Below are positions 25,086 to 64,000 of a DNA stretch of 64,000 nucleotides, piece after piece (the stretch's first letter is position 1; each line of letters opens with the position of its first letter). Position numbers and translations under genes: made by a program. Source of the stretch: Diadema antillarum (Eukaryota); the NCBI RefSeq assembly GCF_040938485.1, contig NW_027271416.1, positions 1 to 64,000 on the forward strand, written 5' to 3'. Under the pieces are notes generated by a model. It did not search any database, had not been told where the DNA came from, and was given only the letters and a program-made list of their open reading frames with translations.

Positions 25086-27934
25086 GGTTCATTCCATCCA
25101 TGCAAAGTATCTCTGTGAAAATAGCTCCGCACCGCGATGTTTACATTTCATTCTCCGGTCTGAATAGCTATGCTCTCCGCGATCCGCTCGTCTGATTATC
25201 GAACAACATCGAAGCACACTGCACTATCGATGCGTACAGTAATCGGTCTCAGTCGTTCGGCAAATTATACTTTTATCGATGTGCCCGAGTAGAATGGGCT
25301 TTTATGGCCATAGGCCTATTTTTGATACATATATTCTTTTTGTGATAGTGTTCATATTAATTATAATGTTCCATTCATACAACAAGATATTGACCCAAAT
25401 GCGGGTGTTAAAAATATAAATAAATTCAACATTACATTACATCAGGGGGCGGGCGTCGATCCGTTTGTACACGATTGTATGTCATCACGGAAATTGACGG
25501 GGGGGGGGGGGGGGGGGACTGGCGGGAGGGGGTATACCCACACGACAGAGCTTTTTCATTAATTTTTTTACAATTGAAATAGAACAATCTCGTGCACAGG
25601 CCTACTTTATGTAGAGTATTCGGAAATGTATCAGAGAAGTGTAGTTAGTAAGTCTGTCATATGTGGAGGGAGGCCATCGAGCGGGGAAGGTGGGGGAGGA
25701 GGTTCCGGGAGATGGGAGCGGAGGTAAGGCCTATGGCCCCCTCTCACTTGATGGAGGCTTTGTTTTGTTTTGTTTCGTTTTTTGAATTGTTTTGTTTTGT
25801 TTTGATTTTTGTAATTGCAGTTCAACGACTGGGCAGGGCACACTTCCGGCGGTGAAATGATTGGACAATGCCAATCCCCAGAGTGCCATAATCAATGCAT
25901 TGAGTGGAGGCTAATACAGTATAGGGGCCTTTATAGCAGGGGAGAAGGTGGGAAGGGGGTTTCCCCTAATAACCCTAACCCCTCCTGTGAGGAAGGCTTT
26001 GTATTTTAAGGACTGTAATAAAAAACAAACAAACTCGTATTGCTTTTTGATCAAATATTCAGAAATTTGTCAATCTCAAAAGTGAAATTTTATGGAAGGG
26101 GAACCTAACGGGGAAGCCAATATCCCCTCCCACGAGAGGGGAGATTTTGCATTTTCAGAGTTGAAATTCAGCTATCTGGTGCACACTTTGGGGAAATATT
26201 AAGACAATTTCTATTACGTTTATGAAAAGCAAAAAAAAAAAAAGAGTTTTCTGCATCTCGGGATTTTTTTTTTGTTGTAGGGGGGGGGGGAACAAACTGA
26301 TACATCTCACTCCCATCACCCACACCCCCCCCCCCCCCGCTCATATTTTCATGGGAGGCGGGGCAACTGTTCCTTTTTCCCTCCAGGATCGACGCCCCTG
26401 CATACGAGGAAGCTTTCGCATCTAGTAGTATTTAAATGCAAATATCTTGTAAGCACATTTTTCGTGACTGACTTTGGGAAATTGTCAATCCCTCCGAAAG
26501 TGTATTAAATCTATAATGGAGGGGAACCTAGCGGAGAAAGAGTCAGTTGAAAGGAGATATCCCCTGAATTCCCTCCCACACGAGGAAACTTCTTCATTTT
26601 TGGAACTAAAGTAACAGCTATATGATTCACTCTTTTTATAAAAAACATTCGGAAATCTGTCAACATAAAAGTGTAATATTAGTCTATATAGGAAAGGACC
26701 GAGCGGGGCAGGTAATGGCAGGGGGTATCCCTCTCCCATCCCATGCTATATGGTGATTTTTTATAATTGAAATTCAACAATCTGGTCCACACTTTGGTGA
26801 AGTGTTATGATAGTTTTCTGTCAAAAAAGCAAGAAAATGTTCCGCATCTCTGGAGTTATTGGGGAAAATGATATGCCCCCACCCACCTGCGATCGACTTG
26901 TCTATCAGGCTGCATTACATTATTATACATTGCAGTCTGCAGCAATAGGTGGTATGCAGGTGCACTGTACTGATAGAACACCCTTCAAAGAATTCCATTT
27001 TTTAATGTTTGAATTTTCCAACGTTGGAGTTTCACGTTGATTCACATTTATTTACCGTATTTATAGATAACTAACACGATTTAGCATAATGAAGCACTTA
27101 AATCTGTTGTGGTTACACTAAATATCATCACTTTCGTTTTGATATAATACCATGTGTTACCCATGTACTATTCACAGTGTTCTCGGTTGCGTTCTTATTC
27201 ATTGTTATTGTTGCGTCATAGACTAATGGAATTAGTGCGTGTGTGTGTGTGTTGATGTGTCTGTATGTATGTATTTGTGCTTGTTACTCCGAGGTAAGTT
27301 AAGAACTACTTAAGTATAAGAATACAGATATTTTCACTCATATTGATTTGCGTTGAAATTATTCATTTGAAACTGGTCGATTTATTTATTTATTTATTTT
27401 TTGCTATTACATCTGTCTGATGTACAATGTACATCAGTGATTATCAGGCTGGCGACACTTCAAAATAATAGAGTGCATTCCAATTTCTTGCGACATTTTC
27501 AAGAAATGCACTGAACGCCAGTAGTGGTCTGATATTATTGCTATATAAAAAAAGTTGGGTATTTTCATCCCTGGATTGTACATGATTGCGCCCAATGTTA
27601 GATTCTTCGAAAGAATATCTGATCTGAGAAAGTAAACACATCGTGATCGTGATTAAGAAAGGGATGACATCCTGGTCTGCAAGAAGAAGACGTCGATTAT
27701 TTTCTACTTTGATAATGGTTCGCTTATACCTGTTACATCACGTGAAGCAATAGAATATGGTTTGAATGTTATTTCATAATTTATATGGAAAGATATTATC
27801 ACAGTCATTACCGTTACTAACATCTCATGTGCAGATATGGATCCATGGAAACTGATATACGATAAATACTGAGACGTACGTCATGGCAGTGAGAACATGT
27901 TAATCTAACAACGTTACTTTTTTTCGTTACCTGA

Positions 27935-28450
27935 GTATACTAAGTATCATTGTTCAGAATCTAAGCTATGCGACTCTTTAAATGAGGTAACGAAAGTTTT
28001 GTGTCTTTTGTCCCTTTGCGGCTCCCAACAAAATTCATGGAGAGCTTTCTTCCCTACCGCCTCTGACTTCTGAAAACCACTCTGATTGGTAGAGCTATTG
28101 TTCTAAATCGGAGCTCACGAAGGCGGGCGGCTTTACCCTTTCCTATTGTTCTCGCTTTCAAACGCCGGACGTTCATAAGGACGGATACTCAAATCCATAG
28201 TAGCGTCATCTTGGAGTAATCACCATCGCCTCTGTCTTTAGTGATTGGTTGTACAACTTCGACCAATGAAAATCAAGCATCAGTGGGAGGAGGAGTCCAT
28301 TACTCTTATTACTGATCTCTCTCATCGGGTAAAGATAAGAGGTCCAAAATTTTGCCCTTCACTTTTCGACACAAGCCCAGCAAGTCAAGACGCGTGATAC
28401 CGATCTTCGTAGAGCACTTTATTCGATTCACTCTTCTCTCATCATCGACC
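27935..28450 (+). promoter_or_regulatory. Proximal promoter of copy A (conserved with 39318-39853 upstream of C)
   Basis: High A/C conservation, CCAAT boxes at 28085, 28244 and 28263, and GC-box-like ggcgggcgg. Confidence 0.55.
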
Positions 28451-29525
28451 ATGGCTGATTCCCTCTGGTTGCTCGCCCACAAGTCGTCGTCCGTTTCAAC
28501 TGAACATTCACGTCGTCGACGTCCGACCAAGTTCACCAAACTGCAGCTAGAGAGACTCGAGGTCGAATTCAGCAGAGACCGATATCCTGACATCGTTTCT
28601 AGAGAGAAGCTGGCCGCAGCATTTGGTCTCAGCGAAGCCAGGATTCGAGTAAGCAATATTTTGTTTTATCCCAGTAAATAACGCTTTTGCATGTCTCATT
28701 ATTATTTTGTCAATTAGTAAATATTTTCTAACAGACTTCTTACTGAAAGTAAGTGTTAGCGTATCTGCGCTCAAGGATTATGAGCCAATTTGCTATTTAT
28801 CGTGATTTATCTAAGTACTAAAACTATTCATAATGTTACTTTCATCAATGAAGAGGATCTTAATGGCTCAAAAATGGTAGTCTATTATATTATACACAGT
28901 AAAAGAAACGTGTCATGGAGAATATTAAGTGTATTATCATTGTTATAACGACGACGACGATGGTGATGATGATATTAATGTGCTTTCATACATGAAATCT
29001 AAACAAAGAGTGATGTGTCCTTTTCTCCATGTGCAGGTCTGGTTCCAGAATCGTCGTGCACGTTATCGTCGAGCCGTCCGTACTTCCGATCCAGTTCAAT
29101 CAGTTACCGGGATGAGCCGCATCGACAACGTGTTCGCAGAACCTGAGGTGGAATACAGTAGGAAGCGAAAGCGATCTTCGACATTCGATGTCATCGAACG
29201 GGAGATCACACCGCCACCTAAGAAGTTCGCCATCAACGACTCACCGATGTCAGTCGATTTCCTGTCTCGTAGCAGCCGATCACCGAAATCCTGGTCGTCT
29301 TTCCGCATCAGCAAGGAGCGTGACATCATCAATTTGCAGCAGACAACATCTCATCGAAAGCAGCAGGGCGCCACCAATCCCTTGATGTCTGTAGACTTCC
29401 TCTCCCGAAGCAGCCGACAGATCTCTTCGCATCCATCGATAAAAGCGAGTCTCTACTACTGTACCACACCAGCTCCATTCTACACGTCTATTGGTCATCG
29501 TTTCGTCTACATCATACCATCCTGA
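28451..29525 (+). CDS. pmar1: pmar1/micro1-like paired-class (Q50) homeobox repressor, copy A, intact, 228 aa
   Basis: Exons 28451-28648 and 29037-29525. The intron falls between homeodomain residues 46 and 47, the typical PRD-class position. HD reads RRRRPTKF...[11 protein letters not shown]...RIR|[12 protein letters not shown]. Two [11 protein letters not shown] eh1-like motifs at 29247 and 29385. The pmar1/micro1 assignment rests on recalled family features (RRRRPT arm, double eh1-like motif, tandem clustering), not a search. Confidence 0.85.
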
Positions 29526-29849
29526 ACTTTTGAATGAACTCAAGAGAACATTCGAGAAAAGGATTGTACAACACGTGAACACTCTCCTTAATGGACGTTT
29601 ATTTTGATTTCTAGCATGATCTTGCCTTCATATGCTTCTAATGTCATGTCATTGTCTATATTAAAATGTACAAAAAAGAACACATCCCTCTGAATATTAT
29701 TTGCCATTCTCGTATTCGTCGATCCTTTTCAAGTGTCGTTTTCAAGTGTAGGTTGGTGTATAAAATGGTGTGTGTACGTCTTTGTGTGCGTGTGTGGGTG
29801 CGTGCGTGTGCGTGTGCGTGTGTCTGTATCTCCCCCTCTCTCTAAACAC

Positions 29850-30069
29850 NNNNNNNNNNNNNNNNNNNNNNNNNNNNNNNNNNNNNNNNNNNNNNNNNNN
29901 NNNNNNNNNNNNNNNNNNNNNNNNNNNNNNNNNNNNNNNNNNNNNNNNNNNNNNNNNNNNNNNNNNNNNNNNNNNNNNNNNNNNNNNNNNNNNNNNNNNN
30001 NNNNNNNNNNNNNNNNNNNNNNNNNNNNNNNNNNNNNNNNNNNNNNNNNNNNNNNNNNNNNNNNNNNNN
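29850..30069. other. Assembly gap (220 N), paralogous to the (TA)n-rich segment near 41430-41570
   Basis: Run of N; both flanks match the region downstream of copy C. Confidence 0.95.
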
Positions 30070-31719
30070 GGTCTATAACTCATGTACATTACACCATCGG
30101 ATCATATGTATGTACGTATGTATATGACTATAAATATATATACATATAATCATATACATACATACATACATATAATCCGATGGTGTGGACTTAGCGATGT
30201 TTAGTTTGAAACATGAAAAACAATTGACCAGAGTGTTATTAATCACTATTTTTAAGACATAAAGTATGAGTGTGAAAGCGAAGATGAAGATTATTTGCAA
30301 CGTAACTTAGAGAAGATCAAATACCAGTAGTGTGTTTATATAACATAAATATATTTACACATATTTACACGTAATAGCACATAACAAAGATGCAAATCAA
30401 AACACATATCAGAAAGGTTGTCTGAGGCTTGCTCGATACAGCAGCAACCGAAATTGCATGCAAACAAGATTTGATTACACTAGTCCTACACTATTTTCAA
30501 TTCAATTTTTATTTCCACTCATGGGGTGGAATACCATCGTCAGCCAAAGGCTGGTTTTCAGAGGGGTCCACACATACAGGTTAAAAATGCAAAATACTTT
30601 CATTAGGACCGAGTAAATCAAGACGTTAATTATTGGTCTCAAGGTTTGTAAATCAGTTGTTTTGAATAAAATTATTGGAAAAAGTGACCAATTGGTATCA
30701 CAAAATATGCATGATCACAGATTCCTAGAGGCGATATTCTGCTCAAAGTTGATTTCACTTTGCACAGACCCAACCTTTCCTTAAAACCAACCAAACAGAC
30801 AAACAAACAAGTAAAAAAAGAAAAATTCGCTCACGTGTAGTGAAAAAGATCTATTACATGTTTGTTTTCGATTGTCAGGCCGACTGAATATTGAATCATT
30901 ACATGGAGGCAAGGTACTTCACTTGAACAATAAAAATGATAATAGTGAAAAGCAGATGTTTTTTATACAAATTACAAATAATAAAAAAAAGAACTTGGAT
31001 GTATGCTACTGCTCAGCTCAGTTTCGTTCCGAATTATCATGTCGACAGTCGCCAATGCCTCAGAAATATAATCACGAAAAACAGAATGACAGCTATAAAG
31101 GAGGAACTAAATTCAAATCAGAGGTATACATAATTAATGTTTTAGATGGACTCTCAGGGAGATATGTATACAGAACACAATTTTTTTTTGAGCCCTTTTA
31201 GAAATTGTATGGAGTATAAAGAAATTATTATAAATGTAGCGATACTGTGTGCACAGGAGTTTAAATTGTCATGAGAACATTTTACTTGATTTGCTTACAT
31301 GACAAGTTACTGATACCCATTAAGTTCCTATGATCACCTATCTCTCCTATTTATATATAATGAATCCCAGTCATGCAACATCACGAAGTTGTATCTTCTC
31401 GAATCTGTGACTGACGCGTTTGGGTTGATTGACAGTCAGGGGTGGACACTTTGTGTCCAGGTTCATCAGCGGCAAGCTTCAATCAAATTGCTTCATCTCA
31501 TCGTCATTAGCCTTGAATGATCCTTTCAAGAGATGAAAAGAATCTTGGCAGAGTTTGATGATGCGGAAGACGCTCCGTTTCCATTGAACTCTGAGCGTTT
31601 GATTACACTCTTTAGATGCACAATTATATAATCGCATGGATCAAAAGCACGCTGAGCGTTGGTCAGCTTTTGTTGGCTTTAATCGCTTGGCGGCTGACCA
31701 TTAGGGAATGAAAGATAGT

Positions 31720-31869
31720 ATGGTTCTTTTTTAGCCGCTTGGTCTCGGTCATCTCGTTAACCTCACTGGTCAGGTGATTCGACCTATTCAACAAGCTTGG
31801 AACATCATTAGACATGACTGGAGAGAAACTGGCTGCTAAACACTCGGCCTCTATGTAGACAGAAGTATG
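31720..31869 (+). pseudogene. Highly decayed pmar1-like exon 1 relic (B/D type), unit 1
   Basis: 31819-31869 ggagagaaactggctgctaaacactcggcctctatgtagacagaagtatg aligns with the B exon-1 end gagagaaactggctgccgcactcggcctcgatgaagacagaatacaa|gtatg. Confidence 0.7.
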
Positions 31870-33378
31870 CTGAAATTCATAGTCCTTGCCGAATTGAAGA
31901 TGTATCTGATTTAATATGGAAAAAAAAATGGGTAAAGCAAAAGAGTTCAAGCTAATAAACCTCAGGTCTCGTAACTACGCCAGGTTTTATTGTGATGTGA
32001 AGATAGGTGAGTCAGTTACTCTGTATCGGGATTCAGTTCCTGACATTTGAGTTCAACTCAGCTCAGTTCACTTTCATATTTTCTCTGCATCTGGATGTTC
32101 TCTGGAAATAACACATGAAAATGGCGATATATATAATATCGACACAAAATAAAAACATTTACAGAGCATACATTCACAGTGTAATGACCACAATAATCTT
32201 TGAAGTAGTTGAACAAAATTCAATAAAATCTAAGAAGTCAATGACACATTTTTTTAGAGAAAAAATGTAGGGGTTTGTGTATTTAGAATGTTCGTTATAA
32301 GTGATGGCAGCCTCAGAAAGAGGAAACACACACAGAAATGGTGAAACTGCTACTGAAACTTTTCTTATGCTAACTTAATGGCATCTCCGGATGGAAACGA
32401 GTGAGGAAGGAAGAAAATAAGCAACGTAAGAAGTTACGTGTGCAGAGCAGTGAATTAGGTAATGAAATGTGCTTATAATTATTACTGCATGAAGAGCGGT
32501 TGTAAAATGTAATGCAAAAGTGATATACATGTGAATATGATAGACGTGTGTGTGTTGTGTATCATGTATGAGTGGTCTTGTGTAATGCCAAATACGTAGT
32601 GATAGAGAGTGTACGCGACGGTATTGGTGGTTTGCTTGCTCTCTTGTGAGCATGTATTATCGTGTATAGCTTGTTTATTGCTTTAAATTTCTGACGTCTA
32701 AGCCTATACCTCTACAATGTTAGTTTTAATGAAAGGAATTATTTCAGAGTTGCAAAAGGAAAACGCCTACTCTTACTCTCTACAGGTAAGCCATAATGAT
32801 GTAAATGGAACACATGTAATAATACTTTCGAACAAATATTCATTTATTTGTCTTTACCCCTGATCTCCTAATGTAATTTTGTATCTGCCGTTTGTAACTT
32901 TGTTTGGATCACTAGCAATCAAAGTAAGTACTTGACTTACTTGTTATGATTAGGGTATTTCAATGCCAGCGTTTACTTCCATTAAACCAATAAAAACAGA
33001 ACATTTATACATGTCCCTAATTTTGTGCATTTGCTTCTTCGTGTCATATTTTACAAAGTGTCTGTTTTGGGGGGTTTATATATGTATCTGATTATGAAGA
33101 CGATAATGATTATAATTATACCTCTTACTATGCATTTGTACTACTACTTCTGCTACTACCACTACTATAAAAAAAATGCTACTACTGCTACTGTGAAATA
33201 CAAGTAAAATTACGTAATACGACACAATGCTATAATAACAAGGGTTAAAGCAATAACATTTGTTATATTGATAAAGTGATGATAGTACGAAGAATCATAA
33301 TTTTGTCGTGGTAATCATCATTGTTGTTTTCATCGCTAATCATCATTATCGTCCAATAATGTACCCTGTCTTAAGGTA

Positions 33379-33818
33379 CAGTTGAACCTCTCTTATCCGG
33401 CCTCCCTTTATCCGGATCTCTCTATTATACGGACGCAGTCTCGCCGTGATTTTTTGTTAAATAATTACGGGAGGAAAGGGGGATTCCCAACTCCTTGAGA
33501 ACTCCTACACAGACACACATGAATTACATATACTTGATACATTTCTTAATAGTTATTTAGGTAAATAATCCCAAGAATTTATAAAAGAAAATGATTTAAT
33601 TCTTGCAAACACGAACCTCTATTTTGGGGTCTGTTACTGAGTGTAACAATGAAAAGGTTGCAGTATACACATTACTACACGTGGTACTACAATAGGCTAC
33701 TGTACATGTGTATGTATATTATGTACATGTATAAAGCATTGAGTCTCCCGTATCCGGCCAAATCCCTTATCCGGATGAGCCTCGGTCCCGACTTGTCCGG
33801 ATACGAGAGGTTCAACTG
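33379..33818. mobile_element. Tigger-like MITE, 440 bp, present only in duplication unit 1
   Basis: TA|CAGTTGAACCTCTCTTATCCGG ... CCGGATACGAGAGGTTCAACTG|TA. The paralogous empty site at ~44700 has a single TA. Confidence 0.85.
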
Positions 33819-36580
33819 TATATCCAATGACATTTTCACATAGTTTATGCTCGCTGTGATGTGATAATTATTGTCGACCCTTATCATGCTTATAGGTTGG
33901 CCTGAGACTCCTGATTGACATGTTGTTGTTATTAAGTTTTGGGGCGTACAATTCGTGTGCCGAATATTGACGCCATCTACGTGCGGGTCTCTGTATCTTT
34001 TTGGCTTTCGTTGTTGTTACAGTACTTTTCATGACGGGTCCCAGGTCCGGGCGTCAGTGAAACGTTCCTCCCTGATTGAAAGTACGCGGACTGACCGATA
34101 TAGAGGTGACTATAGTCGAGGCGACGTAGACTGAAATCCTCCATAGCACAATTTTCAAAAGGGATTCATTGAATGACCTAACGAGACGGTTTACTTTCAT
34201 CTCGTTAGAGACAGTGTAGCGGCAGAATGTCATTGTAGTTTAAAGACGAGACCGAATCAATAGCAGCTCTTTGAGGACAATCATTGAACGTGCTATTCAA
34301 GCGACAGGCTGAATAGACATGACACCACCCGACACATTCAATATTCATCGAGTTCTTTTGAAGCGGGGGAGTTCTAATGACGATTTAGTATCTGCAATAA
34401 ATGTTGTGCTTCATAAAGCCACTGCCCCTGATCTTGATCCCCTCAAAGGGATCGGCAATATTTTCATCGCCTTAGTTCACTAAACCTTCAACTCGTGCTT
34501 TTGTTCAGTTACTTTGTAGGCAGAGTAAAGAGTAGGGAAGCGAGCTTGCAAAATTGCATCTGAAGAAGATCCGGCTCTAATTGAGCGCGTGAATCACAAG
34601 GCGTACTGAATGGTAGCGTGAGAATGATCACAGTTTAGAAGCTACCCCATACTCTATCCTTTCTTGATCGAAAGAAAAGTTAGAAAATGGATAAAGCCCT
34701 ACATCACTGAATTCGTTAAAATGACATCTCAAATGATATATGTTTCCAAATCTTGTGTGGAAGTTACCAAAACAATTTACTCACATTCAATCTATTTGCC
34801 ATAATTATTTCATCAGTCTTGAACGCTGATTTTTTTTTTCTTTTTATCACAGCCTATCCACCACGGAGAGATCTGCATAGGTTTCCAAAATTCCAACAAA
34901 CATCATTAACATTAAGGTCTTGCTCCCTTATCGGTGATTACAGATCTTATACAACTCAAATCGTAATAACTATATTACTGACTAATTACGTAATAACTAA
35001 AACAGGACTCGATGATGATGTCGTGACCTGTTTCAAGAACTTGCGTCTTTCACATCAAGTTGTTTCAGGAATGTCATGACTGTAACAATGAGGACGCTCT
35101 TGTTATAATCTTTACAAGGTAGTATATAGGAGAAATCGTAAAGTGGAAAGTCGTGTCCCAGATACATTCTTATTTTCTATTGGGGAACTTATCATACCCC
35201 TGTTTCGTGAAAACATTTTCGTTTTTACTTTCTGATTTATTCTGTCTTAATGTAATGGTTTGTTTGGTCCGGAATCTAGTGTCCTTTTGTTATAAGTTAA
35301 AAAGAGAACATACATGATTATCTTTAGCTTCTCTGTTTCACAGTGGTTGATATTCAAGCAAACTTGTTTAGTTCTTCACGAGTTCACTGAACTTTCATAT
35401 GCAAGTACGCCGACTAACATTAATCCAAGTTAGAATACAATGTTAATAATGCATCCCATCCTGTATGACTTGAATGCTGATATTCAATATTATATTTTTA
35501 TCATTTGAACTTTTATTCAATTCTTCGAATTCTTAAAATGTTAATCATCCTACATTTGAATTGAATTTAATCTAAGCTCTGCTGGGCAATGAAAACTAGA
35601 AGTACAAAACTGAGGAGCTTGATACAATGCAATGTGACAATAAAAATGTAGATAAATTATGTGATTTGAAGTACCACTGTCGGACTGTGTGTGCTCATAT
35701 GTCTATTGTATTTTTTAGAGTATTGCTTGATTTTATATTTGTTCAAGACTGTTTTTTTTTGTTGTATGTTTGAGTGTCTTTGCGTGCGTCTGTGTGTGTG
35801 TGTGTGTGTGTGTGTTCGGTGTGTATGTGTTGTGCACGTGTTCATCAATATCGTATCATAATAGGCAGCTGTGTCTTCTTAGTATCAAATTTTTCAATAT
35901 TTACCATCTGTACATTTTATCAATTCTCCCTTGTATTTCTCATTCCAGATTCCGTTTGCATCACTTCATTGTTGATCCAAAGTTAACTAAAAATTCTAGT
36001 CCCTCTCTAAAATTCATTAAGTTATTTATGAAGTTAAGACCTAATTTTAATCAAGCATGAATACCGGCGAGCATTTACCCTTATCTCAAAGTCTAGCCCA
36101 CTGTAACAACAAAAGAACGACACATACATAACTATACATACACGCAAGCACACACGCATATAAGTAATCATTGTGTTACTTGGGTTACACCAAACACACA
36201 CACACACACACAGACTCAAACAAACAAACAAACAAACAAACACACAAACAAACAAACAAACAAACAAACAAACAACCATGAACAAATATAAAATTGAGCA
36301 ATACTCAAAAATACCACAGGAACAAGATAAGATGAAATGAATGAAATCTCAATGTCAAACCGTAATGTTTATTATCAAACATTGAAGATAAAGAAACAAA
36401 ACAATGTTGCTGAATTCATCGCGAGTGTCTCAGAACAGAGGAATAGTGTTCTGAAGTCGGAAGCATTCTTGTTTACAAAATTGTTTGCAGGAAAGTGTCA
36501 AACAAACTTCTCAATATGAGAAATGATATACAGTATCACATTTCAGTCACTCCTATGAAAGTGCGGCAGCTTCACAGCAG

Positions 36581-37612
36581 TCAGTGTGGAACGACGAAGA
36601 CGTAAGGATGACTAAACATGCAGAATGGCGACTGGATGTGTTGGAGACTCCCTTCACGGTATGGCGATGGATACGAAGAAGTCGGTCGGCTGCTTCGGGA
36701 GAGGAAGTCTACAGACATCAAGGGATTGGTGGCGCCCTGCTGCTTTCGATGAGATGTCGTCTGCGGCAAATTGATGACGTCATGTTCCTCGCTGATGCGG
36801 AAAGTCGACCAGGAATCCGGTGATCGGCTGCTACGAGACAGGAAATCGACTGACATCGGTGAATCGTTGATGGCGGACTTCTTGGGCGGCGTGGTGTTCT
36901 CCTGGTCGATGACGTCGCATTCCGTTGATCGCTTACGCTTTCTTGTGGATGAAGACTCTGTTCCCTTGATGTCGGTTGACCTGTTGATCTGGTTGTAGCT
37001 GATGTCTGGTCGAGCAGAGAGGGAGTTGAGTGAAGCTCGACGAAGGCGTGAACGACGATTCTGGAACCAGACCTGAAGTTAAACAAATCACAGATCTGAC
37101 GTTAGCATTTTGCTTCATGCACAAACATTTTTTTAAACATAAAACGTAACATGCTACTGCCAGAAAGAAGTCACCAAATGTCGAGGAAAACATAAAGGAC
37201 GTGCTTCTTAACCTCGGCCATTTATATTCTCGCTTTGCTAGAAATGTTTGAGTCCCAAATTTTCATCTATCTCAGGTATTGCATTGTAATAACAGCCTAT
37301 GAGAATATAGCTGTAATTTGAAACCATTAATTTACATTCAGTAATATCAAAACAGTATTAAAAGAGAAAATCAACTTTACTTCATCATTTATACATCTTT
37401 GCTTTACATACTTGTATTCTGTCTTCATCGAGGCCGAGTGCGGCAGCCAGTTTCTCTCTGGAAACGATGTCGGGATATCGGTCGATGTCGAATTCAGCCT
37501 TCAGCCTCTCGAGCTGCCATTCGGTGAACACGGTCGGACGTCGACGACGAAGACCCTTGGTAGGAACGGACGTCGAGACTTGAGGGAGAAGGGAGAGCAG
37601 TGAATCAGCCAT
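36581..37612 (-). CDS. pmar1: pmar1/micro1-like homeobox, copy B, intact, 230 aa
   Basis: Exons 37612-37412 and 37072-36581, open throughout on hand translation. HD reads RRRRPTVFTEWQLERLKAEFDIDRYPD...LGLDEDRIQ|VWFQNRRSRLRR. Two MSVDFLS motifs. Confidence 0.85.
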
Positions 37613-41120: not shown

Positions 41121-41526
41121 ACTTTTGAATGAACTCAAGAGAACATTCGAGAAAAGGATTGTACAACACATGAACGCTCTCCATAATGGACGTATTGTTG
41201 ATATATATCATGATCTTGCCTTCAGCTATGATTCTATGTCGTGTCGTCAAAATAATGTAACAAAAGAATACATCCCTCTGAATATTATTTGCCATTCTAG
41301 TATTTGTCCTTTTATCCCGTCTCTTTCAATTCGTGGCGTGTGTCGTTTTCAAGTGTAGGTTGGTGTATAAATGATGTGTGTATATGCCTTTGTGTGTGTG
41401 TGTGTGTGCGCGCGCTCGTGCGTGTGTGTATCTCCCCCTCTCTATACATATACATATACATACTGTATACACACAAACACACATACAAAGAATTAGGAAA
41501 CCAGTTTTGCTGTTACAAAAATGTAA

Positions 41527-41573
<47 letters not shown>

Positions 41574-42991: not shown

Positions 42992-43150
42992 ATGGCTCTT
43001 TTCAGCCGCTTGGACTCGGTCATCTCGTTAACCTCACCGGTCAGGTAATTTGACCTATTCAGGCTTGGAACATTCGACATCGAGTAATATCCCGGCATCA
43101 CTGCTACCCAGAGAACTGGCTACTACACTCTGTCTATAGATAGAATTCAA
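42992..43150 (+). pseudogene. Highly decayed pmar1-like exon 1 relic (B/D type), unit 2
   Basis: ttcgacatcgagtaatatcccggcatc...gagaactggctactacactc...gatagaattcaa aligns with B ttcgacatcgaccgatatcccgacatc...gagaaactggctgccgcactc...gacagaatacaa. It starts with ATGGCT at 42992 and contains a stop and indels. Confidence 0.7.
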
Positions 43151-44487: not shown

Positions 44488-44529
<42 letters not shown>

Positions 44530-48537: not shown

Positions 48538-51500
48538 ACCGTATGGATTGGTTTTGTAAAGATATCGGTTTGTGGGGAAACGTTGAGATACGACTTAACT
48601 TCGAGAGAATCTTAGTGAATTGTGGTGGTAGTACCAAAGTAGCTAGTGACAGCGGGTAATTGATGCTAAACTAAAGTTGGTCATCAAAGGGTAATGCGTG
48701 ATAAGAAGATAAGTACGTTACGTATTAGCAAAGCCGCGTATCACTTTCACGCGCCATAAGCGTTTGATAGGAACGGACTTTTGATTGGTCCGATAAACCG
48801 ACCAATGAGATTACCCGAGTAGCGGCTTGTTTAAAGTTTCACGTCCGGCTATTCACAGGAGCGCGAATCCCCTGATCTACGTTGGCTGGGAAATTACAAT
48901 AGAACTTTAATTTGTTTTCCTTTTGTTCATTAGCGACCCGATTGTCGGTTCGCTGCCGACGAACCGGTCTTGTATCATCTTCCTGCATGGGTACAATAGC
49001 GTATTGCCGCTGTTCTACGACTTGGATTGTTTCTTCATTTTTCATCGGAAATCGGGCGCAGTGAACGGTCGATTATTGTGGAATTGACTAAAGCTTGTAA
49101 GACTGTTCAGAATGATCATCGCGTCAATGCAAAGAGTGAAGGAAATTGAGGCTGACGTATGCTTCAAAGAACGTTGATTTCTAAGCACATACGGTGAATT
49201 TTAAGAACACTTTTTTCTTCTTCTATATATTGCCTTTTCTGCTGATAACGGTTTGTAGTTTACATTGTAATTACCAGTCAGTGAAAACAATATCAGAATC
49301 AAGAAATTGTATTTGCACAATAATAACGCATGTAATTATTTTATCAGCAAACGTTGTCTTACTATGGGTAAATCAAACTTTTTTTCGTTCTCACGGGTCC
49401 CCTCCAAACATGGCAAGCATCGTCTTGCAAGCACACTTCATTATTTCATAATTACTTTTATTTCTTTATTCTAGTGACTTTCAATGTTTAATCCCCTATG
49501 TTAACTTTGATCAATGTTCTGCTATAAAAATATAGTTGAAGTATGATAGATTGAGGAGTTTGATACAATGTGAGAATGAAGCTTTTGATATGACTTTCTG
49601 TTAATATGATACTTGGAATGACCGACCAACCGCGGCCGCGTGCGTGGTGGTAGTGTTGGTGATGGCGGTGTGTGTATGTGTGCGTGTGTGCTCTGGACGT
49701 TTAAATATGTGTGTGCCCGTGTTCATCAATGTCGTATGATAGGTTATCTTCTTAAATTGCTTTCAAACTGGTCAATCTCTACCGTTTTCTCTATGTTTCA
49801 TTCCGTTCTCTTAGTATCTCTATGTTACATCAGATTCTGCTTATATCTGTATATAGCTTGGTGGCTGCAACGAGAGTACTCTAAAAAATTCAGTCCATCA
49901 TTGCCATAAAGTTTTCTATGAAGATTTAAACCCCTTCACAATTCAACTCAAGCACAAAGTAAACATACGTTCGAGCATTTACCTGTAGGTAATACGCGAG
50001 ACCAATCACACATAATAAACACACATACACACATACACACATAAGCACACGCACACACAAGCAAATATGCCATATAGAATTTCATAAGCAATGACTGAAA
50101 TTTTTGTCAGTAACGAAGATACACACATACACACACACGCACACACACACACACACACACACGGAGACATGGACACAAAGGTCTCAAAACGTGATAGTAA
50201 TTTAATGAACTTTTGCCAAGACACAAAACAATCAAACACAGGAAAGTAGCTAATTGTTTAATGATTGAAGCATACAACAAGAATCAGCATACAAATTATA
50301 CATCCAAAAGAACCAAAGAGTAGTATGAACAGACCAATATTACAAGTAATTTTTGTACACAGGCTTATCATTTGATTAAAGTTACATTGGATGAAATGCT
50401 GAACCCTCGACGGTTTCAGTTCTTGTATATAGAGAGCAGAGAGAGAGATAGAGAGAGAGGGGGGGGGGGAGATACCGAGAGTATATACAAAGAAGGAGAC
50501 TACAGACTCATGGTATGATAAACGCTTTAGATGGATGGTCAGATTTTCTAACGTTGCTATGCGGGGGAATTAATTACAACGAGCCACAGAAAGTTTGGTT
50601 ATGCAAAAACTATCAACAAAAGACTGGATAAAAATGTAAATCATGTCAGCATTCATTTTTCAATCGGAGAATTGGTATACAGAATTAATGCTTGTTTTCA
50701 CTTGTGTAATCATCTTACCATCACGTACGATCGTAAGGAAGTCGTGCTGTGCAGGACTGTACAAGGATGCCAATTATAAAGAATATGAAGGCTTTATACT
50801 ACAATGTATATTAACATTAACTAATTTGTTATATTGTAACGACTACATATTATTTTGTGTACAATAATAGTTTGATAACATGACCGAAACATCCTTAAAG
50901 ATAATACACTACATTTTTAGCTATATGACAGCTCATTAAAATTAATGTGTGAAATTGGTCTTGCAATCCTACCATGCCGACTTGGTTATACAAAGATTAT
51001 GTTGTGACATTAATCAAACATATGTTTTTATGGTATGCTACAAATAATTATGATAACCATCACGGCCTTTCAGTTAACTTCAAATCTCTCAAGTGTTGGT
51101 AACATACTGTTTTTCAATCATTCCATTTGGAGCTAAATACATCGCCGCAAACTCCTCCGTTACAAGTGACGTCAGTAATTCAATACGCCACTGTTTTACT
51201 TCACACTTACAAAAGGGGAATGGGCTAATGCACATTATATCGCAAGAAACATCATCAGATAGATCAAACAACAATGCGGATAAAGTAGAAAAAAAGGGAT
51301 TGATCGAAAAAAGGAAAAAGAAAGGTGGAGGACACATTCACTTTGTTTATATCACATCGCCTGTGCGATCATTTATCCAAAATCGGGTAGTATAACATTA
51401 TTCTCTCTATCAATCTCTTCCACATAATCAGTGGATTCTCCAGCAACATGTACACATTCCATTTGTGTAGCTTCATTCATTCAAGCATATAGCACAGTGT

Positions 51501-52102
51501 GCCTGGTTGATACCTTTTTGCTGACTATTGCTAGTCACCTGGGGCGAACCACAAGGGGTCGGCACTTACTCTTTGCCATATATGAATGAAGTGGGATCGC
51601 TAGCTGATCAAACAACAGGATATGCATATCAAAATAAAGAATAATTCATTCATTCATTCATTCATTCATGCTTTAATTTTCATTTCCAATCAATATACAT
51701 AGGTCACAGTTCCGTAGCTGGTTAACCGCAGCCTGTTTCAACGCATTAAATGTTCGGATACAACATGACTCTCCTAATTCTGAATTAGAAAATCACTGTT
51801 CATCCCGATAGCTTAGTCCTCTGAGATGTGAACTATAAAATGATATCTCAGTTATAATCTCATTCAATGCATTATTGATTAGACTACCAGTCTTACACAT
51901 GAACAGACCAAAATAATCGGATTCAAAAAAAAAAATTTTCTGTTTGTCTCCTTTTCGTTTTCGATCAAACCGAGGTCAAAAGCAGACTGAGCAACTACTA
52001 AGCAGATTATTTCAATTAGCCTACATGGCAATGTGAAAAAGTAATGAAATATTCCTATAACTTGTCTTGAGCAGAGTTAAATGCAAGCGTATTGGCTCAT
52101 GT

Positions 52103-52143
<41 letters not shown>

Positions 52144-54159: not shown

Positions 54160-56007
54160 TCACAATATATCAAATATGTAGAGTCTATCTTCAGTGCTGA
54201 AAGCTATCTCACCACTCTCAAACACCTGTAGATAGTACCAATTTCTTTTCTTTGGTTTCTGTATTTTGAAATCGGTGATGATATTGTGCAAGTACTCCAA
54301 ATCTCTCGTGTATCGATCGATACTGACGAGACCCTCCTCGTGCTTCACCCAGGCTACAATGACAGAATCATCTCTACAAACAGCTGGGTAGACAAACATA
54401 CCCTCCTTCTCCAAGACATTCTCCTTCTTCCCGTTACCATCAAGGCAGACGACAGTTGATAGATCTCTCAGTATCAGTTTCCCCATGGTGTGAAAGGAGA
54501 ATAATAGCAGAGGTGTATATCCACCACACATTATTACCCTGACTGCTTTACCACCATGTGGGGTAAATACTTGCATCATTCTAGGCTTCCTATAACTGAA
54601 ATGGATAGTGTCATCTCTATCCACAGTGAGACCACCTACCCCTCCTTCATCATAACGCATTGTTTCGAACATGACATCAAGTTTCTCCCACTGTCGAGTG
54701 TAGAGTGACATCTTTTCGTTTGTATCACGTACAACACTTCGACCATCAGACAGGAATCCAAGTTCACGGATACTGACATCCTTCAGCACGGTCTGCTGTA
54801 ACTCGCCATCAGTGGAGTAGAGATGGATTCCGCCAAAATGCGAACCCACCGCCATCTTACCGTCTGGTGTACTAGTCATACAGTTCATGCTATTTTCGGT
54901 CGGGAGCTCTACGTCTGCTTTGACATCCCACGTGCAACCTTCTAGTTCTCCAAGATAAAGTTCATTGACCTGCACGTATTTACTAAATGAAATCTTCTGA
55001 GCTCGTTTTGTCACACCTCTCGTTGATTGATCGTCAGGATCATCTCGTCCCAGAAAGGTCTTCAAGTTCTCACACAGCGTGTCGTGTGCAAACAAGGCGT
55101 CTTTCTCTAGTGGTACCTTCACACCGTTAGCTACCAGCTCTTCCATAGCGGTCATACAACGAATTGTTTGGTGACTCTCTTCCTCCATGACTTGTAATTC
55201 CTTCTCCAAATTTTCAGACAATCGTTTCACTTGACATTTCAGGGCCTCTCTTCTGGCTGACAATAGTTGCATGTATTCTTCGTACGTCTTGTCGATGTCA
55301 TCATTGAGTCTTCTCATCATGTTTGTTATTTCATTTCGTTGTGTCTCTATGAAATCAATATAATTTACAATGGTTGTTTTCTTTGATTTTGCCCTTTCTT
55401 GTAACTTCTTGATATTTTCTATCAATTTCTCCTCGTGGATAGCTGCCTCTTCAATCTGATGCCCTGCTTGTAAGTGTCTTAACATCCCGCACTTACAGCA
55501 GACGTACTCCCGACATCCGATACAGAAACACTCCTCATCATCGTTAGGATGTTTCTTACACTTCCGTCTCCTCTTAAGCGAAATTTTTCCGGAGAGCACC
55601 TCGCTAATGGGCACTACTTCGTGGTTGGAGACCGGTTTCCAGATAGAGTGTGTTTTCTCACACGATTTACACATATATTTCCCACAGTCCTGACAGAAGG
55701 ACACAGCTGGCAACTTTTCGTCCTTCTCACAAACTGTGCATATTGGGCTCTTTGCTTTAACTTCTTCCACTAGAGAATTCAGGGGTACGATTGTTTGTAA
55801 CTTACTCACATCTCCACTGGGTAGGGGCGTTTCTTTTCTGCATACAGGACATGTTATAGCTTGTTGGTTGGGCTGAGTTTGAGAGATGCATTCCAAACAG
55901 TCTTTGCAGAAGGTGTGAGAACATGCCAGTGATTTGGGTTGGTTGAATAGTGCCAGACAGATAGGACACTCCAGATTCTGGCTGCTGATTTGATGAAACG
56001 TTGCCAT
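54160..56007 (-). CDS. TRIM-family E3 ubiquitin ligase (RING, B-box1, B-box2, coiled coil, C-terminal beta-propeller-like region; TRIM56/TRIM71-like), 615 aa, single coding exon
   Basis: RING CPIC...CSHTFCKDC...CPVC, B-box CTVC...CQDC...CKSCEKTH...H, B-box CKKH...FCIGC...CCKC...H...H, and a charged coiled coil. The real start is probably MATFHQ at 56007, directly after a pyrimidine-rich cag acceptor (56017-56018). Confidence 0.9.
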   Translation of the reverse strand: MATFHQISSQNLECPICLALFNQPKSLACSHTFCKDCLECISQTQPNQQAITCPVCRKETPLPSGDVSKLQTIVPLNSLVEEVKAKSPICTVCEKDEKLPAVSFCQDCGKYMCKSCEKTHSIWKPVSNHEVVPISEVLSGKISLKRRRKCKKHPNDDEECFCIGCREYVCCKCGMLRHLQAGHQIEEAAIHEEKLIENIKKLQERAKSKKTTIVNYIDFIETQRNEITNMMRRLNDDIDKTYEEYMQLLSARREALKCQVKRLSENLEKELQVMEEESHQTIRCMTAMEELVANGVKVPLEKDALFAHDTLCENLKTFLGRDDPDDQSTRGVTKRAQKISFSKYVQVNELYLGELEGCTWDVKADVELPTENSMNCMTSTPDGKMAVGSHFGGIHLYSTDGELQQTVLKDVSIRELGFLSDGRSVVRDTNEKMSLYTRQWEKLDVMFETMRYDEGGVGGLTVDRDDTIHFSYRKPRMMQVFTPHGGKAVRVIMCGGYTPLLLFSFHTMGKLILRDLSTVVCLDGNGKKENVLEKEGMFVYPAVCRDDSVIVAWVKHEEGLVSIDRYTRDLEYLHNIITDFKIQKPKKRNWYYLQVFESGEIAFSTEDRLYIFDIL

Positions 56008-58885: not shown

Positions 58886-59090
58886 TTGTAACCTGTCTTC
58901 ATCGAGGACCAGAGCAGCAGCCAGTTTCTCTCTGGAAACGATGTCGGGATATCGGTCGATGTCGAATTCAGCCTTCAGCCTCTCGAGCTGCTCTTCGGTT
59001 AACACGGTCGGACGTCGACGATGAAGGCCTTTGGTAGGAACGGACGTCGAGACTTGGGGGAAAAGCGAAAGTGCATGAAGAATCAGCCAT
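58886..59090 (-). pseudogene. pmar1: pmar1/micro1-like copy E, exon 1 only, frameshifted
   Basis: ATG GCT GAT at 59090 is out of frame with the HD (25 nt versus 21 nt in B between GAT and CAA). HD helices 1-2 are recognisable, the normal GT donor is absent, and I saw no VWFQN exon downstream. Confidence 0.85.
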
Positions 59091-61960
59091 GCCGGAGTTG
59101 GATTGGTTTCGCAAAGATTCCGGTTTGTGCAAGGATATGATTTAACTTCGGAACAATGGATTGTTCCTCTCTGAAAGGTCGACAATTGCAGAGTTGACTA
59201 AAACCTAGGGAAACTATATTTCGGAATGATCATCGCGTCAATGCAAAATGTGAATGAACTAAGCTCTAACGGTTATACAATATGTAATATTTCAAAACTT
59301 TGATGACGTAATGATATGAGGCATATAAACCTCCACTGACTTTCCTTTGGATATTATACGTGAATTGATTGGTTTTTGCAACAAAAGAATGGTCTAATGT
59401 CAGCCGGCTAAACATATTGTAGAGGTGCAATCAAGCTTACTTTACTATTTCTTTTTTGCTACTTGACGTGTTGTACGGCAAAAAACAAAACAAAACAAAA
59501 CAAAGCAAAAATCCACAATATTAATGTACCAACTAGTGGAAAATTTGTAACATCACCATGACATCATCTCATCTAATTTGCATTCAACGTGTCTTTGTGA
59601 TCCAAATCTAGGTTTCGAAAAAACAAAGAGAACGTTTTAATGACGCAGTTTATTTAATTCTTGCTTGGTTGCATTGAATATGTAGTATTTGTTCGTTTAA
59701 GTTGACTACTTAAGGAGGTAAAAGGATTTTTTTTTTTGGTCAGAGTAAGAGACACTTGTTGTAAAATATGTCAAACAGGGGGTTTTTCACTATCGATTTA
59801 GTGTGAAGGAAGATGAAAACGTCTTTCTTCTTTATGCAAATGGATTGTGTGTCTCAATATCGTTTGACAGTTTTGTCTTTTTGATAGAATAACGTATTTC
59901 CGCCATGTGTATAAATGTATCCTAATTTATCTTTATCTTTCTTTGTTATATTTTCATTTTCTCCTTACAACATTCCATTGTTGCCTCGCAAGTTCACACC
60001 AAAAATTCCAGCGCATCTCTCTCAAGAATTTTTTTTTCTGTGAAGATTACTAAATCCACTCATAATTTCACTCAAGCAGCAAGCACAAACACACCTACCA
60101 TGCCTACGAACATTAACCCTTAAGAATACACGGGAACTCGGTTTTACACATAAATACACACACATACACACACAAACACACACACACGCACGGATACATG
60201 GAAACAAAGTTCTCAAAACGTTTTAGTGATTTAATGAACTTTTGCCACGACACATCAAAGACAAACACCGGAAAGTAGAACATTGTCAAAATCGGATTGA
60301 AGCATACAACAAGAATAAACATACAAATTGTATATCCAGAAGAGCCACAGAGTATAGTATGAACAGACGATTATAACAAGTTATTTGGGTGCAGATTAAT
60401 GCTTATTATCGTTTGATTAAAGTTACAGCGGGTGAAATGCTGAACCCTCGACTGTTTCACTTCATGTAGAGATGGGAGGGGGATACATTGTACCGAGAGT
60501 ACAGAGGAGATTACAAAATGGTATATAATGTAACGCGGTAGATGGATGGTCAGATTTCACAATGTTACAATGAGGGGAATCAATTATAAAGAAACACTGA
60601 AATTTCGGTTATACAAAAATTTTCAAAAGAAGAATGTAAATTATTTCAGCATTCATTTTCAATCGGAGTACTGGTGTACAGACGTCTAACAATAGCGTAA
60701 TGATCTTGTTATGCATTGTTATGCACGAGCGTAAAGAGTGTTGTACAGGACTGTACAAGAATGACAATTATGATGTAGAATTTGAATGCTTTACTATGCC
60801 AAAGTAAACTAACGTGATATATTCTAATGACAAGATGATATTTTGTGTAATAATAGTTGGTTAACATGACCTGAACATCCTCAAAGATACATATTTTTGA
60901 AGAAAATTACATTTTCTTAGCTATGACAGCTTAATGACTGGGCGAAATATTGCAGTCTCACAGTTCTACCATGCCGACTTTCATTCATTCATTCATTTTT
61001 CCATCTTCAACAAAACTTGTAAATACGATTTTTTCACAGAAGATAAGTACATACAGTATATGTCAACATTACAAAACGTGATAAATGAAATTTATGGATA
61101 TACAACCAAAATTGTGAAAAAGAAAAAGCACAAAAGCATTCTGAAGTTTAGAAAATGCAGAAGATAGGGACGAGGAATGCTGAAGAAGCAATGGTTGTAG
61201 GGTTCATGCACCCCAAACATAGTAAAACAATTATACATACATCTTGGTTATACAATGATTATTAATCAAACTTGGTTATATAATGATTATCAATCAAATA
61301 CATATCTAATACATTTTAATGCTACGTTATGAATAACTATCAAGGCATTTCAGTTAACTTCAGATTTCTAAGTATGCATGGGTTATATTATACTACTTCT
61401 CGATCATTCCATTTTGAACTATAAATGCATCACCTCAGACTCCTCCGTTACAACAAAAGTGACGTCAGTAATTCAATACGTCACAAAAGGGAAATGATCT
61501 AATGCAGACATCGGACAGCAAGAAACATCATCAGATAGAAAATAATGTGGATGAAATAGAAAATGAAGATGAGAGAGAGGGAACGATTAAAAAGGGGAAA
61601 AATGTGAGACACAAAGTTATTTTGTTTGGAGCGTCACCAGTTTGATCATATCCCAAATCTTATAAAATTCTCTAAACTACTCTCTTCTACCCAAGCATAA
61701 TGGCTCCTGCACAAAACAACAATTATACATCTCACATCTCTAGCTAATCAAAACAATAGCAACTTCGTATTGGAAAATAATGATCTTCCGTAATGCATTA
61801 TTAAACAGACTAACACATGAATACAGTCATAACAAAATAATCTGATTCAACAAGAAAACGAATTATTGTTCAGTTTGTCTCCTCTTCGGTCAAATCAAGG
61901 AAATTATTACCAAAGGTAAACTGATTAGTAACTTGATTATTTTAGTTAGCCTGCATGCCA
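58886..61960. repeat. Partial duplication of D exon 1 and its upstream region (paralogous to ~48340-52030)
   Basis: Shared blocks 49110-49133/59224-59247, ~50110-50400/60150-60430, ~51050-51320/61340-61580 and ~51900-52030/61820-61960. Confidence 0.8.
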
Positions 61961-63960: not shown

Positions 63961-64000
63961 TAATCATGGGAGAAAATGTAGCAAGGAGAGGTGGAAGCAT

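What the first reader, a model, noticed from the sequence alone, without database searches (positions are those of the whole stretch)
26760..61960. pmar1/micro1-like homeobox cluster with birth-and-death structure: 7 loci, only 3 intact
Seen: layout is A(+), relic(+), B(-) | C(+), relic(+), D(-) | TRIM | E(-). A ~10-11 kb unit was duplicated, then D's 5' part was duplicated again, and all stages of decay coexist. Established: pmar1/micro1 is a PRD-class repressor at the top of the echinoid micromere double-negative gate and occurs in species-specific tandem clusters. Inference: this is a lineage-specific cluster with two old subfamilies. I see no short tandem peptide repeat in exon 2, which I recall in camarodont Pmar1, so the host may be a non-camarodont urchin.
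Basis: partly seen in the sequence, partly recalled or inferred. Interest (0 to 1): 0.7.

Follow-up and report, generated by a model that had tools for sequence, protein, structure and literature searches.

The report
Diadema pmar1 homeobox gene cluster
This stretch of the sea urchin Diadema antillarum holds the start of a large cluster of pmar1/micro1 genes (in other urchins, the repressor that launches skeleton-cell specification), with working copies, decaying copies and fossils side by side: a known kind of gene family in a species where it had not been described.

Summary

- A, B and C have intact two-exon reading frames that equal public protein models.
- D has lost its ATG and carries R53H in the homeodomain.
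- E is an orphan first exon with a 4-nt frameshift and a dead splice donor.

The genes are true Pmar1/Micro1/Hbox12 family members:
- end-to-end alignment with S. purpuratus Pmar1 (45-50% identity);
- the same intron position;
- two eh1-like motifs;
- reciprocal best hits;
- a homeodomain tree with 94/91 support.

Two subfamilies predate the D. antillarum/D. setosum split.

The ~10-11 kb duplication is a real tandem. The other haplotype contig (C85) carries both units in the same order. The units differ by 10-23%, against 2-5% between the haplotype flanks.

The N gap lies 325 nt past A's stop codon, in simple sequence, and touches no coding sequence.

One inference fails: E is not a re-copy of D's 5' part. 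It is the first of at least seven "orphan exon 1 + TRIM" units that continue beyond the window.

Expression and function are untested, because no RNA run was listed. Earlier notes of this scan on neighbouring windows reached the same family assignment.

The parts
26800..37729 (.). Repeat unit 1: A-type gene (+), relic (+), B-type gene (-). It includes a ~1 kb indel at 26920-27922 relative to unit 2.
   Evidence: Self-blastn: 77-90% identical to 39194-48651.
28451..28648 (+). Gene A exon 1: start codon plus homeodomain residues 1-46.
   Evidence: It is the prefix of public protein P0001.
29037..29525 (+). Gene A exon 2: homeodomain residues 47-60, two eh1-like motifs, TGA stop.
   Evidence: AG acceptor, open frame, suffix of P0001.
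29850..30069 (.). Assembly gap, downstream of gene A and not in any coding sequence.
   Evidence: Flanks are collinear with unit 2 and with the other haplotype contig.
31821..31864 (+). Relic 1: 44-nt remnant of the 3' end of a B-type exon 1.
   Evidence: 86% identity, E 1e-8; alignment.
36581..37072 (-). Gene B exon 2, with stop codon.
   Evidence: Suffix of P0014.
37412..37612 (-). Gene B exon 1.
   Evidence: Prefix of P0014.
39194..48651 (.). Repeat unit 2: C (+), relic (+), D (-).
39854..40051 (+). Gene C exon 1. The frame is intact, but the homeodomain carries T6I, L13M, F20I, S30F, E32K and A37E relative to the D. setosum A-type member.
   Evidence: (weakest Pfam score, 26 bits).
40638..41120 (+). 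Gene C exon 2, with stop codon. It contains a B/D-like conversion tract at 40784-41039.
   Evidence: (96% identity to B at 36665-36920).
43072..43150 (+). Relic 2: about 80-nt remnant of a B-type exon 1, at the position homologous to relic 1.
   Evidence: 72% identity, E 7e-5.
47426..47917 (-). Locus D exon 2. The frame is open and carries homeodomain R53H.
48337..48537 (-). Locus D exon 1. The ATG is replaced by TTT; the rest of the frame is open.
51570..51579 (-). 10-nt mini-exon (ATG plus 7 nt, followed by GTAAGT) that the public model P0013 uses to give D a start codon.
   Evidence: There is no transcript evidence.
54160..56007 (-). Intronless TRIM gene (RING, B-box, weak propeller-like C-terminus), counted from the first Met of the 696-codon open frame.
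58886..59090 (-). Locus E: orphan B-type exon 1 with a 4-nt insertion after codon 4, homeodomain F8L, splice donor GT changed to AA, and no exon 2.

Best explanation
This is the proximal end of the pmar1/micro1/hbox12 multigene cluster of Diadema antillarum.

**What the genes encode.** Each complete gene has two exons and encodes a protein of about 228 aa. The protein has a paired-like Q50 homeodomain, split by a phase-0 intron between residues 46 and 47. It also has a basic stretch resembling a nuclear localisation signal (my reading of the sequence, not tested), two eh1-like motifs and a conserved C-terminal tail.

**How it would work, by homology (inferred, not shown here).** The proteins would act as sequence-specific repressors. 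In early vegetal blastomeres they would switch off a second repressor, which in other euechinoids is HesC. That releases the skeletogenic and endomesoderm programme.

**How the cluster evolves (shown).** It evolves by birth and death.
- An ~10-11 kb unit, already holding an A-type gene, a dead fragment and a B-type gene, was duplicated in tandem.
- A and B stay conserved.
- C keeps an open frame but collects homeodomain replacements.
- D has lost its start codon.
- E and the relics are fossils.
- Gene conversion keeps the eh1 part of exon 2 nearly identical across otherwise old subfamilies.
- The two haplotypes of the sequenced animal differ in copy content.
For: **Family membership**
- Exon 2 of A finds only Diadema paralogues and then Pmar1/Micro1 proteins of other urchins. 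Scaphechinus 'Micro1/Pmar1 related' scores E 8.5e-26. The S. purpuratus and H. pulcherrimus 90% clusters contain AAL38537 (Pmar1) and BAB85850 (Micro1).
- A homeodomain-only search gives the same nearest relatives.
- S. purpuratus Pmar1, searched back against this genome, hits only this cluster with its exon 2. Its best exon-1 hits are also in the cluster.
- The alignment with S. purpuratus Pmar1 runs end to end: 50% identity for B and 45% for A.
- In the homeodomain tree the cluster and Pmar1/Micro1 form one side of a branch with 94/91 support. A single-copy related gene (L005) falls outside.
- The intron position is shared. Two camarodont models (P0027, P0043) carry read-through insertions at exactly residues 46/47.

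**Cluster dynamics**
- Self-similarity of the window.
- dN/dS by exon.
- Subfamily tree including D. setosum.
- Sliding-window identity.
- Comparison with the other haplotype contig.
- Map of the whole contig.
Against: - There is no expression evidence. No RNA run was listed, so no copy is shown to be transcribed and the splice junctions rest on sequence and on public gene models.
- TCF and Otx motif counts upstream of the genes are at background level.
- No named Phb1/Phb sequence could be brought in, so the split between pmar1 and phb rests on an unnamed candidate (L005).
- The target of repression in Diadema is unknown. According to PMC8505446, citing Yamazaki 2020, cidaroid Pmar1 does not act through HesC.
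- The A-type homeodomain is 25% different from B-type and may not do the same job.
Confidence: 0.85

Rival explanations
1. The two ~10-11 kb units are uncollapsed haplotypes, or a false duplication next to the assembly gap, and not tandem copies.
For: The assembly is diploid-sized: 1.75 Gb, with most homeobox hits appearing as contig pairs. A gap sits inside unit 1.
Against: - The second haplotype contig, C85, carries both units in the same order and orientation: A', B', C', D'.
- The units differ by 10-23%. The two contigs differ by 2-5% in the flanks and 5-10% in the cluster.
- A and C differ at 14 of 198 exon-1 positions. Each has its own closer allele on C85.
Confidence: 0.03
2. The genes belong to another paired-like family (phb1/phb or similar) and not to pmar1/micro1.
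For: The first homeodomain-only tree was weak, at 66/90 support. No named Phb reference was available.
Against: - Exon 2 aligns over its whole length only with Pmar1/Micro1 proteins.
- The genome has a separate single-copy related gene (L005, on C73 and C105). It has the canonical Arg5 and only one eh1-like motif, and it falls outside the clade.
- The shared RRRRPT homeodomain start, with Pro at position 5, is seen in all Pmar1/Micro1 rows and in none of the outgroups.
Confidence: 0.03
3. E arose by a second duplication of D's 5' part.
For: D and E share exon 1 (83-88% identity) and patches of upstream sequence: 50121-50983 with 60148-60980, and 51048-51292 with 61327-61563.
Against: - E's exon 1 is closer to B (91%) than to D (88%).
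- E's flanks match seven or more other orphan-exon/TRIM units on the contig over 2.4-3.9 kb at 73-85% identity.
- The same 'broken exon 1 followed by TRIM' layout recurs at about 71.7, 82.6, 108.6, 149.2, 158.7 and 173.0 kb.
Confidence: 0.1
4. The A-type genes (A and C) are a neofunctionalised Diadema subfamily whose role differs from the micromere repressor. This would parallel the expression subfamilies of P. lividus hbox12/pmar1/micro1.
For: - The A-type clade has a long stem of 0.35 substitutions per site.
- It differs from B-type at 15 of 60 homeodomain positions, including N-terminal arm position 7 and helix-3 position 54.
- There are only two copies per haplotype, both in this window.
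- A is conserved with D. setosum P0003 at 58 of 60 homeodomain residues.
- P. lividus subfamilies differ in expression (PMC5370098).
Against: Both eh1-like motifs and the overall architecture are kept. No expression or binding data exist.
Confidence: 0.25

Closest known systems
S. purpuratus Pmar1 (AAL38537 / NP_999673) and H. pulcherrimus Micro1 (BAB85850)
   Same: - Length of about 230 aa.
- MAD N-terminus.
- Paired-like Q50 homeodomain that starts RRRRPT.
- Intron at homeodomain residues 46/47.
- Basic stretch plus a TPPxKK motif.
- Two eh1-like [10 protein letters not shown] motifs.
- HPYVF tail.
- Multicopy cluster.

   Different: - Overall identity is 45-50%, and 65-68% in the homeodomain (B-type).
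- Diadema has three old subfamilies (exon-1 dS of about 1 between the A and B types). The camarodont rows retrieved here vary much less among themselves.
- Function in Diadema is untested.
P. lividus hbox12/pmar1/micro1 multigene family (Cavalieri et al. 2017, PMC5370098)
   Same: - Two-exon genes.
- Divergent and head-to-tail arrangements.
- Segmental duplication.
- Copies with disrupted frames.
- Copy-number differences between individuals; here, between the two haplotypes.
   Different: - That paper reports intact-unit duplication and no chimeric copies.
- Here there are orphan first exons, short relics, a conversion tract and interleaved TRIM genes.
Phb1/Phb/Pplx, the pmar1-related genes of other echinoderms (Dylus 2016, PMC4709884; Yamazaki 2020, not held)
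   Same: Same wider paired-like group. An eh1-like motif is present.
   Different: - The cluster genes are reciprocal best hits of Pmar1.
- A separate single-copy gene (L005: C73:2013631-2015490) has Arg5 and one eh1-like motif. It is the better phb1 candidate.

Membership tests
Pmar1/Micro1/Hbox12 | Paired-like homeodomain with Gln50 | tested here: met
   Pfam Homeodomain hits on all five first exons. WFQNRR lies at the start of exon 2.
Pmar1/Micro1/Hbox12 | Two exons with a single intron inside the homeobox | tested here: met
   GT..AG phase-0 intron between homeodomain residues 46 and 47 in A-D. PMC5370098 states the two-exon structure. Camarodont models P0027 and P0043 show read-through at the same point.
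Pmar1/Micro1/Hbox12 | eh1-type repression motifs C-terminal to the homeodomain | tested here: met
   Two [10 protein letters not shown] motifs about 46 residues apart, aligned with those of S. purpuratus Pmar1. PMC4709884 names eh1 domains in Pmar1/Micro1. Groucho binding was not tested.
Pmar1/Micro1/Hbox12 | Closest relatives are Pmar1/Micro1 in both directions, and the genes group with them in a tree | tested here: met
   Tree support 94/91. Rows left out of that tree: L006, P0059, P0037.
Pmar1/Micro1/Hbox12 | Multicopy clustered organisation | tested here: met
   17 exon-1 loci on C528 and 13 on C85.
Pmar1/Micro1/Hbox12 | Transient zygotic expression in micromeres under beta-catenin/TCF and Otx | tested here: inconclusive
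   No RNA run was listed. TCF and Otx motif counts are at background.
Pmar1/Micro1/Hbox12 | Represses hesC (the euechinoid double-negative gate) | not testable with these tools
   Needs mRNA injection or knock-down in embryos.
Phb1/Phb | Groups with the single-copy pmar1-related gene and not with Pmar1 | tested here: not met
   L005 falls outside the Pmar1 + Diadema-cluster clade. S. purpuratus Pmar1 scores 38 bits or less on it, against up to 110 bits in the cluster. No named Phb sequence was available.
Birth-and-death multigene evolution | Paralogues of different ages, pseudogenes at several stages, trans-species subfamilies, and copy differences between haplotypes | tested here: met
   It is combined with local gene conversion.

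The most novel reading that the evidence does not exclude
The A-type pair (A and C), found only in this window's region and conserved between D. antillarum and D. setosum, may be a Diadema-lineage paralogue with changed DNA-binding or expression. It would divide the early-embryo repressor role with the B-type genes. If so, it would show, in an early-branching euechinoid, how the pmar1 node of the double-negative gate diversified.
Probability: 0.25. Interest if true: 0.55.

Novelty: new member of a known kind. Interest (0 to 1): 0.4.

Why it matters
Pmar1 sits at the top of the best-studied developmental gene network, the sea-urchin micromere double-negative gate. When Pmar1 came to control hesC is still an open question. 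According to PMC8505446, citing Yamazaki 2020, cidaroid Pmar1 does not use HesC, whereas the euechinoids studied so far do.

Diadema branches early among euechinoids (my background knowledge; one search gives only the NCBI lineage), so it lies between those two groups.

The public records list these genes as 'uncharacterized protein'. Naming them gives workers the reagents to test the gate in this lineage. That means identifying:
- which copies are intact;
- which subfamily is closest to canonical Pmar1 (B-type);
- which copies are decaying.

The locus is also a clear case of birth-and-death evolution combined with local gene conversion and structural variation between haplotypes.

Tried and rejected
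- **Search for phb relatives.** The third word-index protein search, using exon 2 of the candidate phb1 gene (L005), returned nothing. No named Phb sequence entered the trees.
- **Yamazaki 2020 (Development).** The paper is not held.
- **RNA evidence.** The search for RNA runs over B and C listed none. Read laying was therefore not used, and read depth could not be examined.
- **Promoter motifs.** A scan for TCF and Otx sites within 1 kb upstream of A-E gave background frequencies.
- **First homeodomain tree.** With a partial Pitx-like row (L006) it was unstable, at 66/90 support. It was rebuilt without L006, P0059 and P0037.
- **Rfam.** No hits in the window.
- **Joined exons.** Exons were searched one by one by reference. 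Full-length comparisons used public proteins, which I verified to equal the exon translations.
- **The big representative-protein search.** Not run, because the family was not left open.
- **The N gaps.** No letters were looked up.
Full report
**Source and the assembly gap**

The window is G000:C528:1-64000 of a 1.75-Gb, 2963-contig assembly. Exon 2 of the first gene is 100% identical to a 228-aa 'uncharacterized protein' of Diadema antillarum, encoded on a 513,450-bp contig. D. antillarum belongs to the order Diadematoida, so the host is not a camarodont.

There are two N runs, at 19295-19455 and 29850-30069. I tested the second first, as asked.
- It begins 325 nt after gene A's TGA stop (29523-25) and lies beyond A's nearest AATAAA, which is 135 nt past the stop.
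- It sits between GT-rich and AT-rich simple sequence.
- The paralogous unit is collinear across it: 29841 matches 41443, and 30332 matches 41789.
- The second haplotype contig is also collinear across it.

**What is in the window**

Six-frame motif scans, tblastn and blastn find five homeobox first exons and four second exons. All five first exons hit Pfam Homeodomain. A canonical GT..AG phase-0 intron splits the homeodomain between residues 46 and 47.

| Locus | Strand | Exon 1 | Exon 2 | State |
|---|---|---|---|---|
| A | + | 28451-28648 | 29037-29525 | intact; equals P0001 |
| B | - | 37612-37412 | 37072-36581 | intact; equals P0014 |
| C | + | 39854-40051 | 40638-41120 | open frame; equals P0002 |
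| D | - | 48537-48337 | 47917-47426 | start codon lost (TTT), homeodomain R53H |
| E | - | 59090-58886 | none | orphan exon, broken |

- A, B and C have ATG, splice sites, an open frame and a stop. Their exon translations are exactly the prefix and suffix of the public proteins.
- The public model for D (P0013) rescues it with a 10-nt mini-exon at 51579, spliced into an internal AG of exon 1. There is no transcript evidence for this.
- E has a 4-nt insertion after codon 4, homeodomain F8L, and a splice donor changed from GT to AA.
- Two short + strand remnants of the 3' end of a B-type exon 1 lie at 31821-31864 (E 1e-8) and 43072-43150 (E 7e-5). They occupy homologous positions in the two units, so a single relic predates the unit duplication.
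- Between D and E lies an intronless TRIM gene (56007-54160, -) with RING and B-box domains.

**The duplication is real**

Unit 1 (26800-37729) and unit 2 (39194-48651) are 77-90% identical. A ~1 kb indel lies at 26920-27922.

The assembly is diploid: nearly every non-family homeobox hit comes as a pair on two contigs. Contig C85, read in reverse from 330000 to 297300, is collinear with window 4900-43400. Identity is 96-98% in the flanks and 90-95% in the cluster. C85 carries A', B', C' and D' in the same order and orientation.

So both haplotypes have the tandem pair. The units are also far more diverged from each other than the haplotypes are. This rejects the uncollapsed-haplotype explanation.

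Beyond C the haplotypes differ.
- D and D' are only about 84% identical.
- D' (P0005) has a start codon and keeps R53.
- C85 has a third-type homeobox gene where this contig has TRIM and E.
- C' lacks three of C's homeodomain changes: T6I, F20I and E32K.

**Family assignment**

- Exon 2 of A retrieves about 20 Diadema paralogues. After those come Scaphechinus 'Micro1/Pmar1 related' (47% identity, E 8.5e-26), then H. pulcherrimus, S. purpuratus, Lytechinus and Heliocidaris proteins.
- The S. purpuratus and H. pulcherrimus 90% clusters contain AAL38537 (Pmar1) and BAB85850 (Micro1).
- A homeodomain-only search with B gives the same nearest relatives at 77-81 bits. The next family scores 63 bits or less.
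- In the reverse direction, S. purpuratus Pmar1 against this genome hits exon 2 only in the C528 and C85 clusters (67-110 bits). Its best exon-1 hits are there too: 53-62 bits for B-type and 38-46 for A-type. The next locus scores 38 bits or less.
- B aligns with S. purpuratus Pmar1 from the first Met to the C-terminal tail at 50% identity, and A at 45%.
- Shared features are the RRRRPT homeodomain start (Pro at position 5), the basic and TPPxKK stretch, both [10 protein letters not shown] eh1-like motifs and the tail.
- A homeodomain tree puts the Diadema cluster together with Pmar1/Micro1 on one side of a branch, with 94/91 support. I left out L006, P0059 and P0037. The earlier tree that included L006 was weak.
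- A single-copy gene on C73 and C105 (L005) has the same intron position, a canonical Arg5 and one eh1-like motif. It falls outside the clade and is the likely phb1. No named Phb sequence could be obtained.

**Subfamilies and evolutionary mode**

A full-length tree gives three results.
- The Diadema proteins form one clade (100/100).
- Within it there is an A-type clade with a long stem (A, C and D. setosum P0003; 100/100).
- There is also a third type (100/99). The B-type sequences are the unresolved remainder.

Both minor types have D. setosum members, so the subfamilies predate that species split. A-type genes occur only here: two per haplotype.

| Comparison | Exon 1 | Exon 2 |
|---|---|---|
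| Between A and B types | dS 0.8-1.1, dN/dS 0.24-0.34 | dS about 0.3 |
| A vs C | dS 0.10, dN/dS 0.66 | dS 0.105, dN/dS 0.83 |
| B vs D | dS 0.20, dN/dS 0.20 | dS 0.098, dN/dS 0.61 |

(All values.)

Exon-2 dS between types is low because the eh1 segment (A coordinates 29168-29460) is 76-100% identical among all four genes. The flanking intron and UTR sequences are only 40-60% identical. C carries a B/D-like tract at 40784-41039, which is 96% identical to B.

The A-C ratios point to relaxed constraint, and the replacements sit mostly on C. The low B-D ratio in exon 1 suggests that D's decay is recent.

Across species, A keeps 58 of 60 homeodomain residues with P0003, and B keeps 59 of 60 with P0007/P0008.

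Together this is birth-and-death evolution with local concerted evolution.

E is not a re-copy of D's 5' part.
- The contig carries 17 exon-1 loci out to about 198 kb.
- The layout 'broken B-type exon 1 followed by TRIM' recurs at least seven times.
- E's flanks (58008-61782) match those units over 2.4-3.9 kb at 73-85% identity.
- E's exon 1 is closer to B than to D.

The missing 'tandem peptide repeat' is also not a valid clue to the host. The camarodont proteins retrieved here have the same two spaced motifs.

**Mechanism**

Shown:
- gene structure;
- family membership;
- conservation of A and B;
- the decay series;
- the conversion tract;
- the haplotype differences.

Inferred from the family (PMC8505446, PMC4709884, PMC5370098):
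- The proteins are eh1-bearing homeodomain repressors.
- They are switched on early in vegetal blastomeres.
- They lift a second repressor to start the skeletogenic and endomesoderm programme.

Whether that second repressor is HesC in Diadema is unknown. No RNA run was listed, and promoter motif counts were uninformative.

**Literature and earlier notes**

Clustered, copy-variable hbox12/pmar1/micro1 genes that include possible pseudogenes are known in camarodonts (PMC5370098). A 2026 review counted pmar1-related candidates in D. setosum (PMC13701902). In the held library I found no description of the Diadema cluster's structure and no functional work on it.

Earlier notes of this scan on neighbouring windows reached the same family assignment and the same pmar1-TRIM array picture. 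I re-derived those points independently.

**Verdict**

This is a new member of a known kind and of moderate interest.

Noticed in passing
window 54160-56007 (-), and L007-L016: An intact, intronless TRIM gene (RING, B-box, weak WD40/propeller-like C-terminus). It is repeated at least nine times along C528, usually just downstream of a broken pmar1-type first exon. From memory, and unverified, a TRIM gene (strim1) was reported near hbox12 in P. lividus.
   Followed up: partly
window 51570-51579 (-): A mini-exon (ATG plus 7 nt, followed by GTAAGT) about 3 kb upstream of D. The public model P0013 uses it to supply a start codon. There is no transcript evidence.
   Followed up: partly
L005 (G000:C73:2013631-2015490, + strand), with an allelic copy on C105: A single-copy pmar1-related homeobox gene. 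It has the same intron position, a canonical Arg5 and one eh1-like motif (FMSVEFLAKSSR). It is the likely Diadema phb1.
   Followed up: partly
window 2197-3573: A tandem array with a 171-187 bp period (about 7 copies, 76-88% matches), G-rich, with strong GC skew.
   Followed up: no
window 63390-63998 versus L007:499-1575: An inverted repeat pair, 93-96% identical, straddling the window's end. It may be the ends of a transposon.
   Followed up: no
window 26920-27922: A ~1 kb insertion in unit 1 (or deletion in unit 2) between the matched segments 26800-26919 / 39194-39310 and 27923 / 39313.
   Followed up: no
window 47899-47901 (D), and protein P0016 on C85: Homeodomain Arg53 is replaced independently in two copies: His in D and Cys in P0016. 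This suggests repeated loss of DNA-binding competence in the cluster.
   Followed up: no
window 19295-19455: A second assembly gap (161 N), outside the finding.
   Followed up: no
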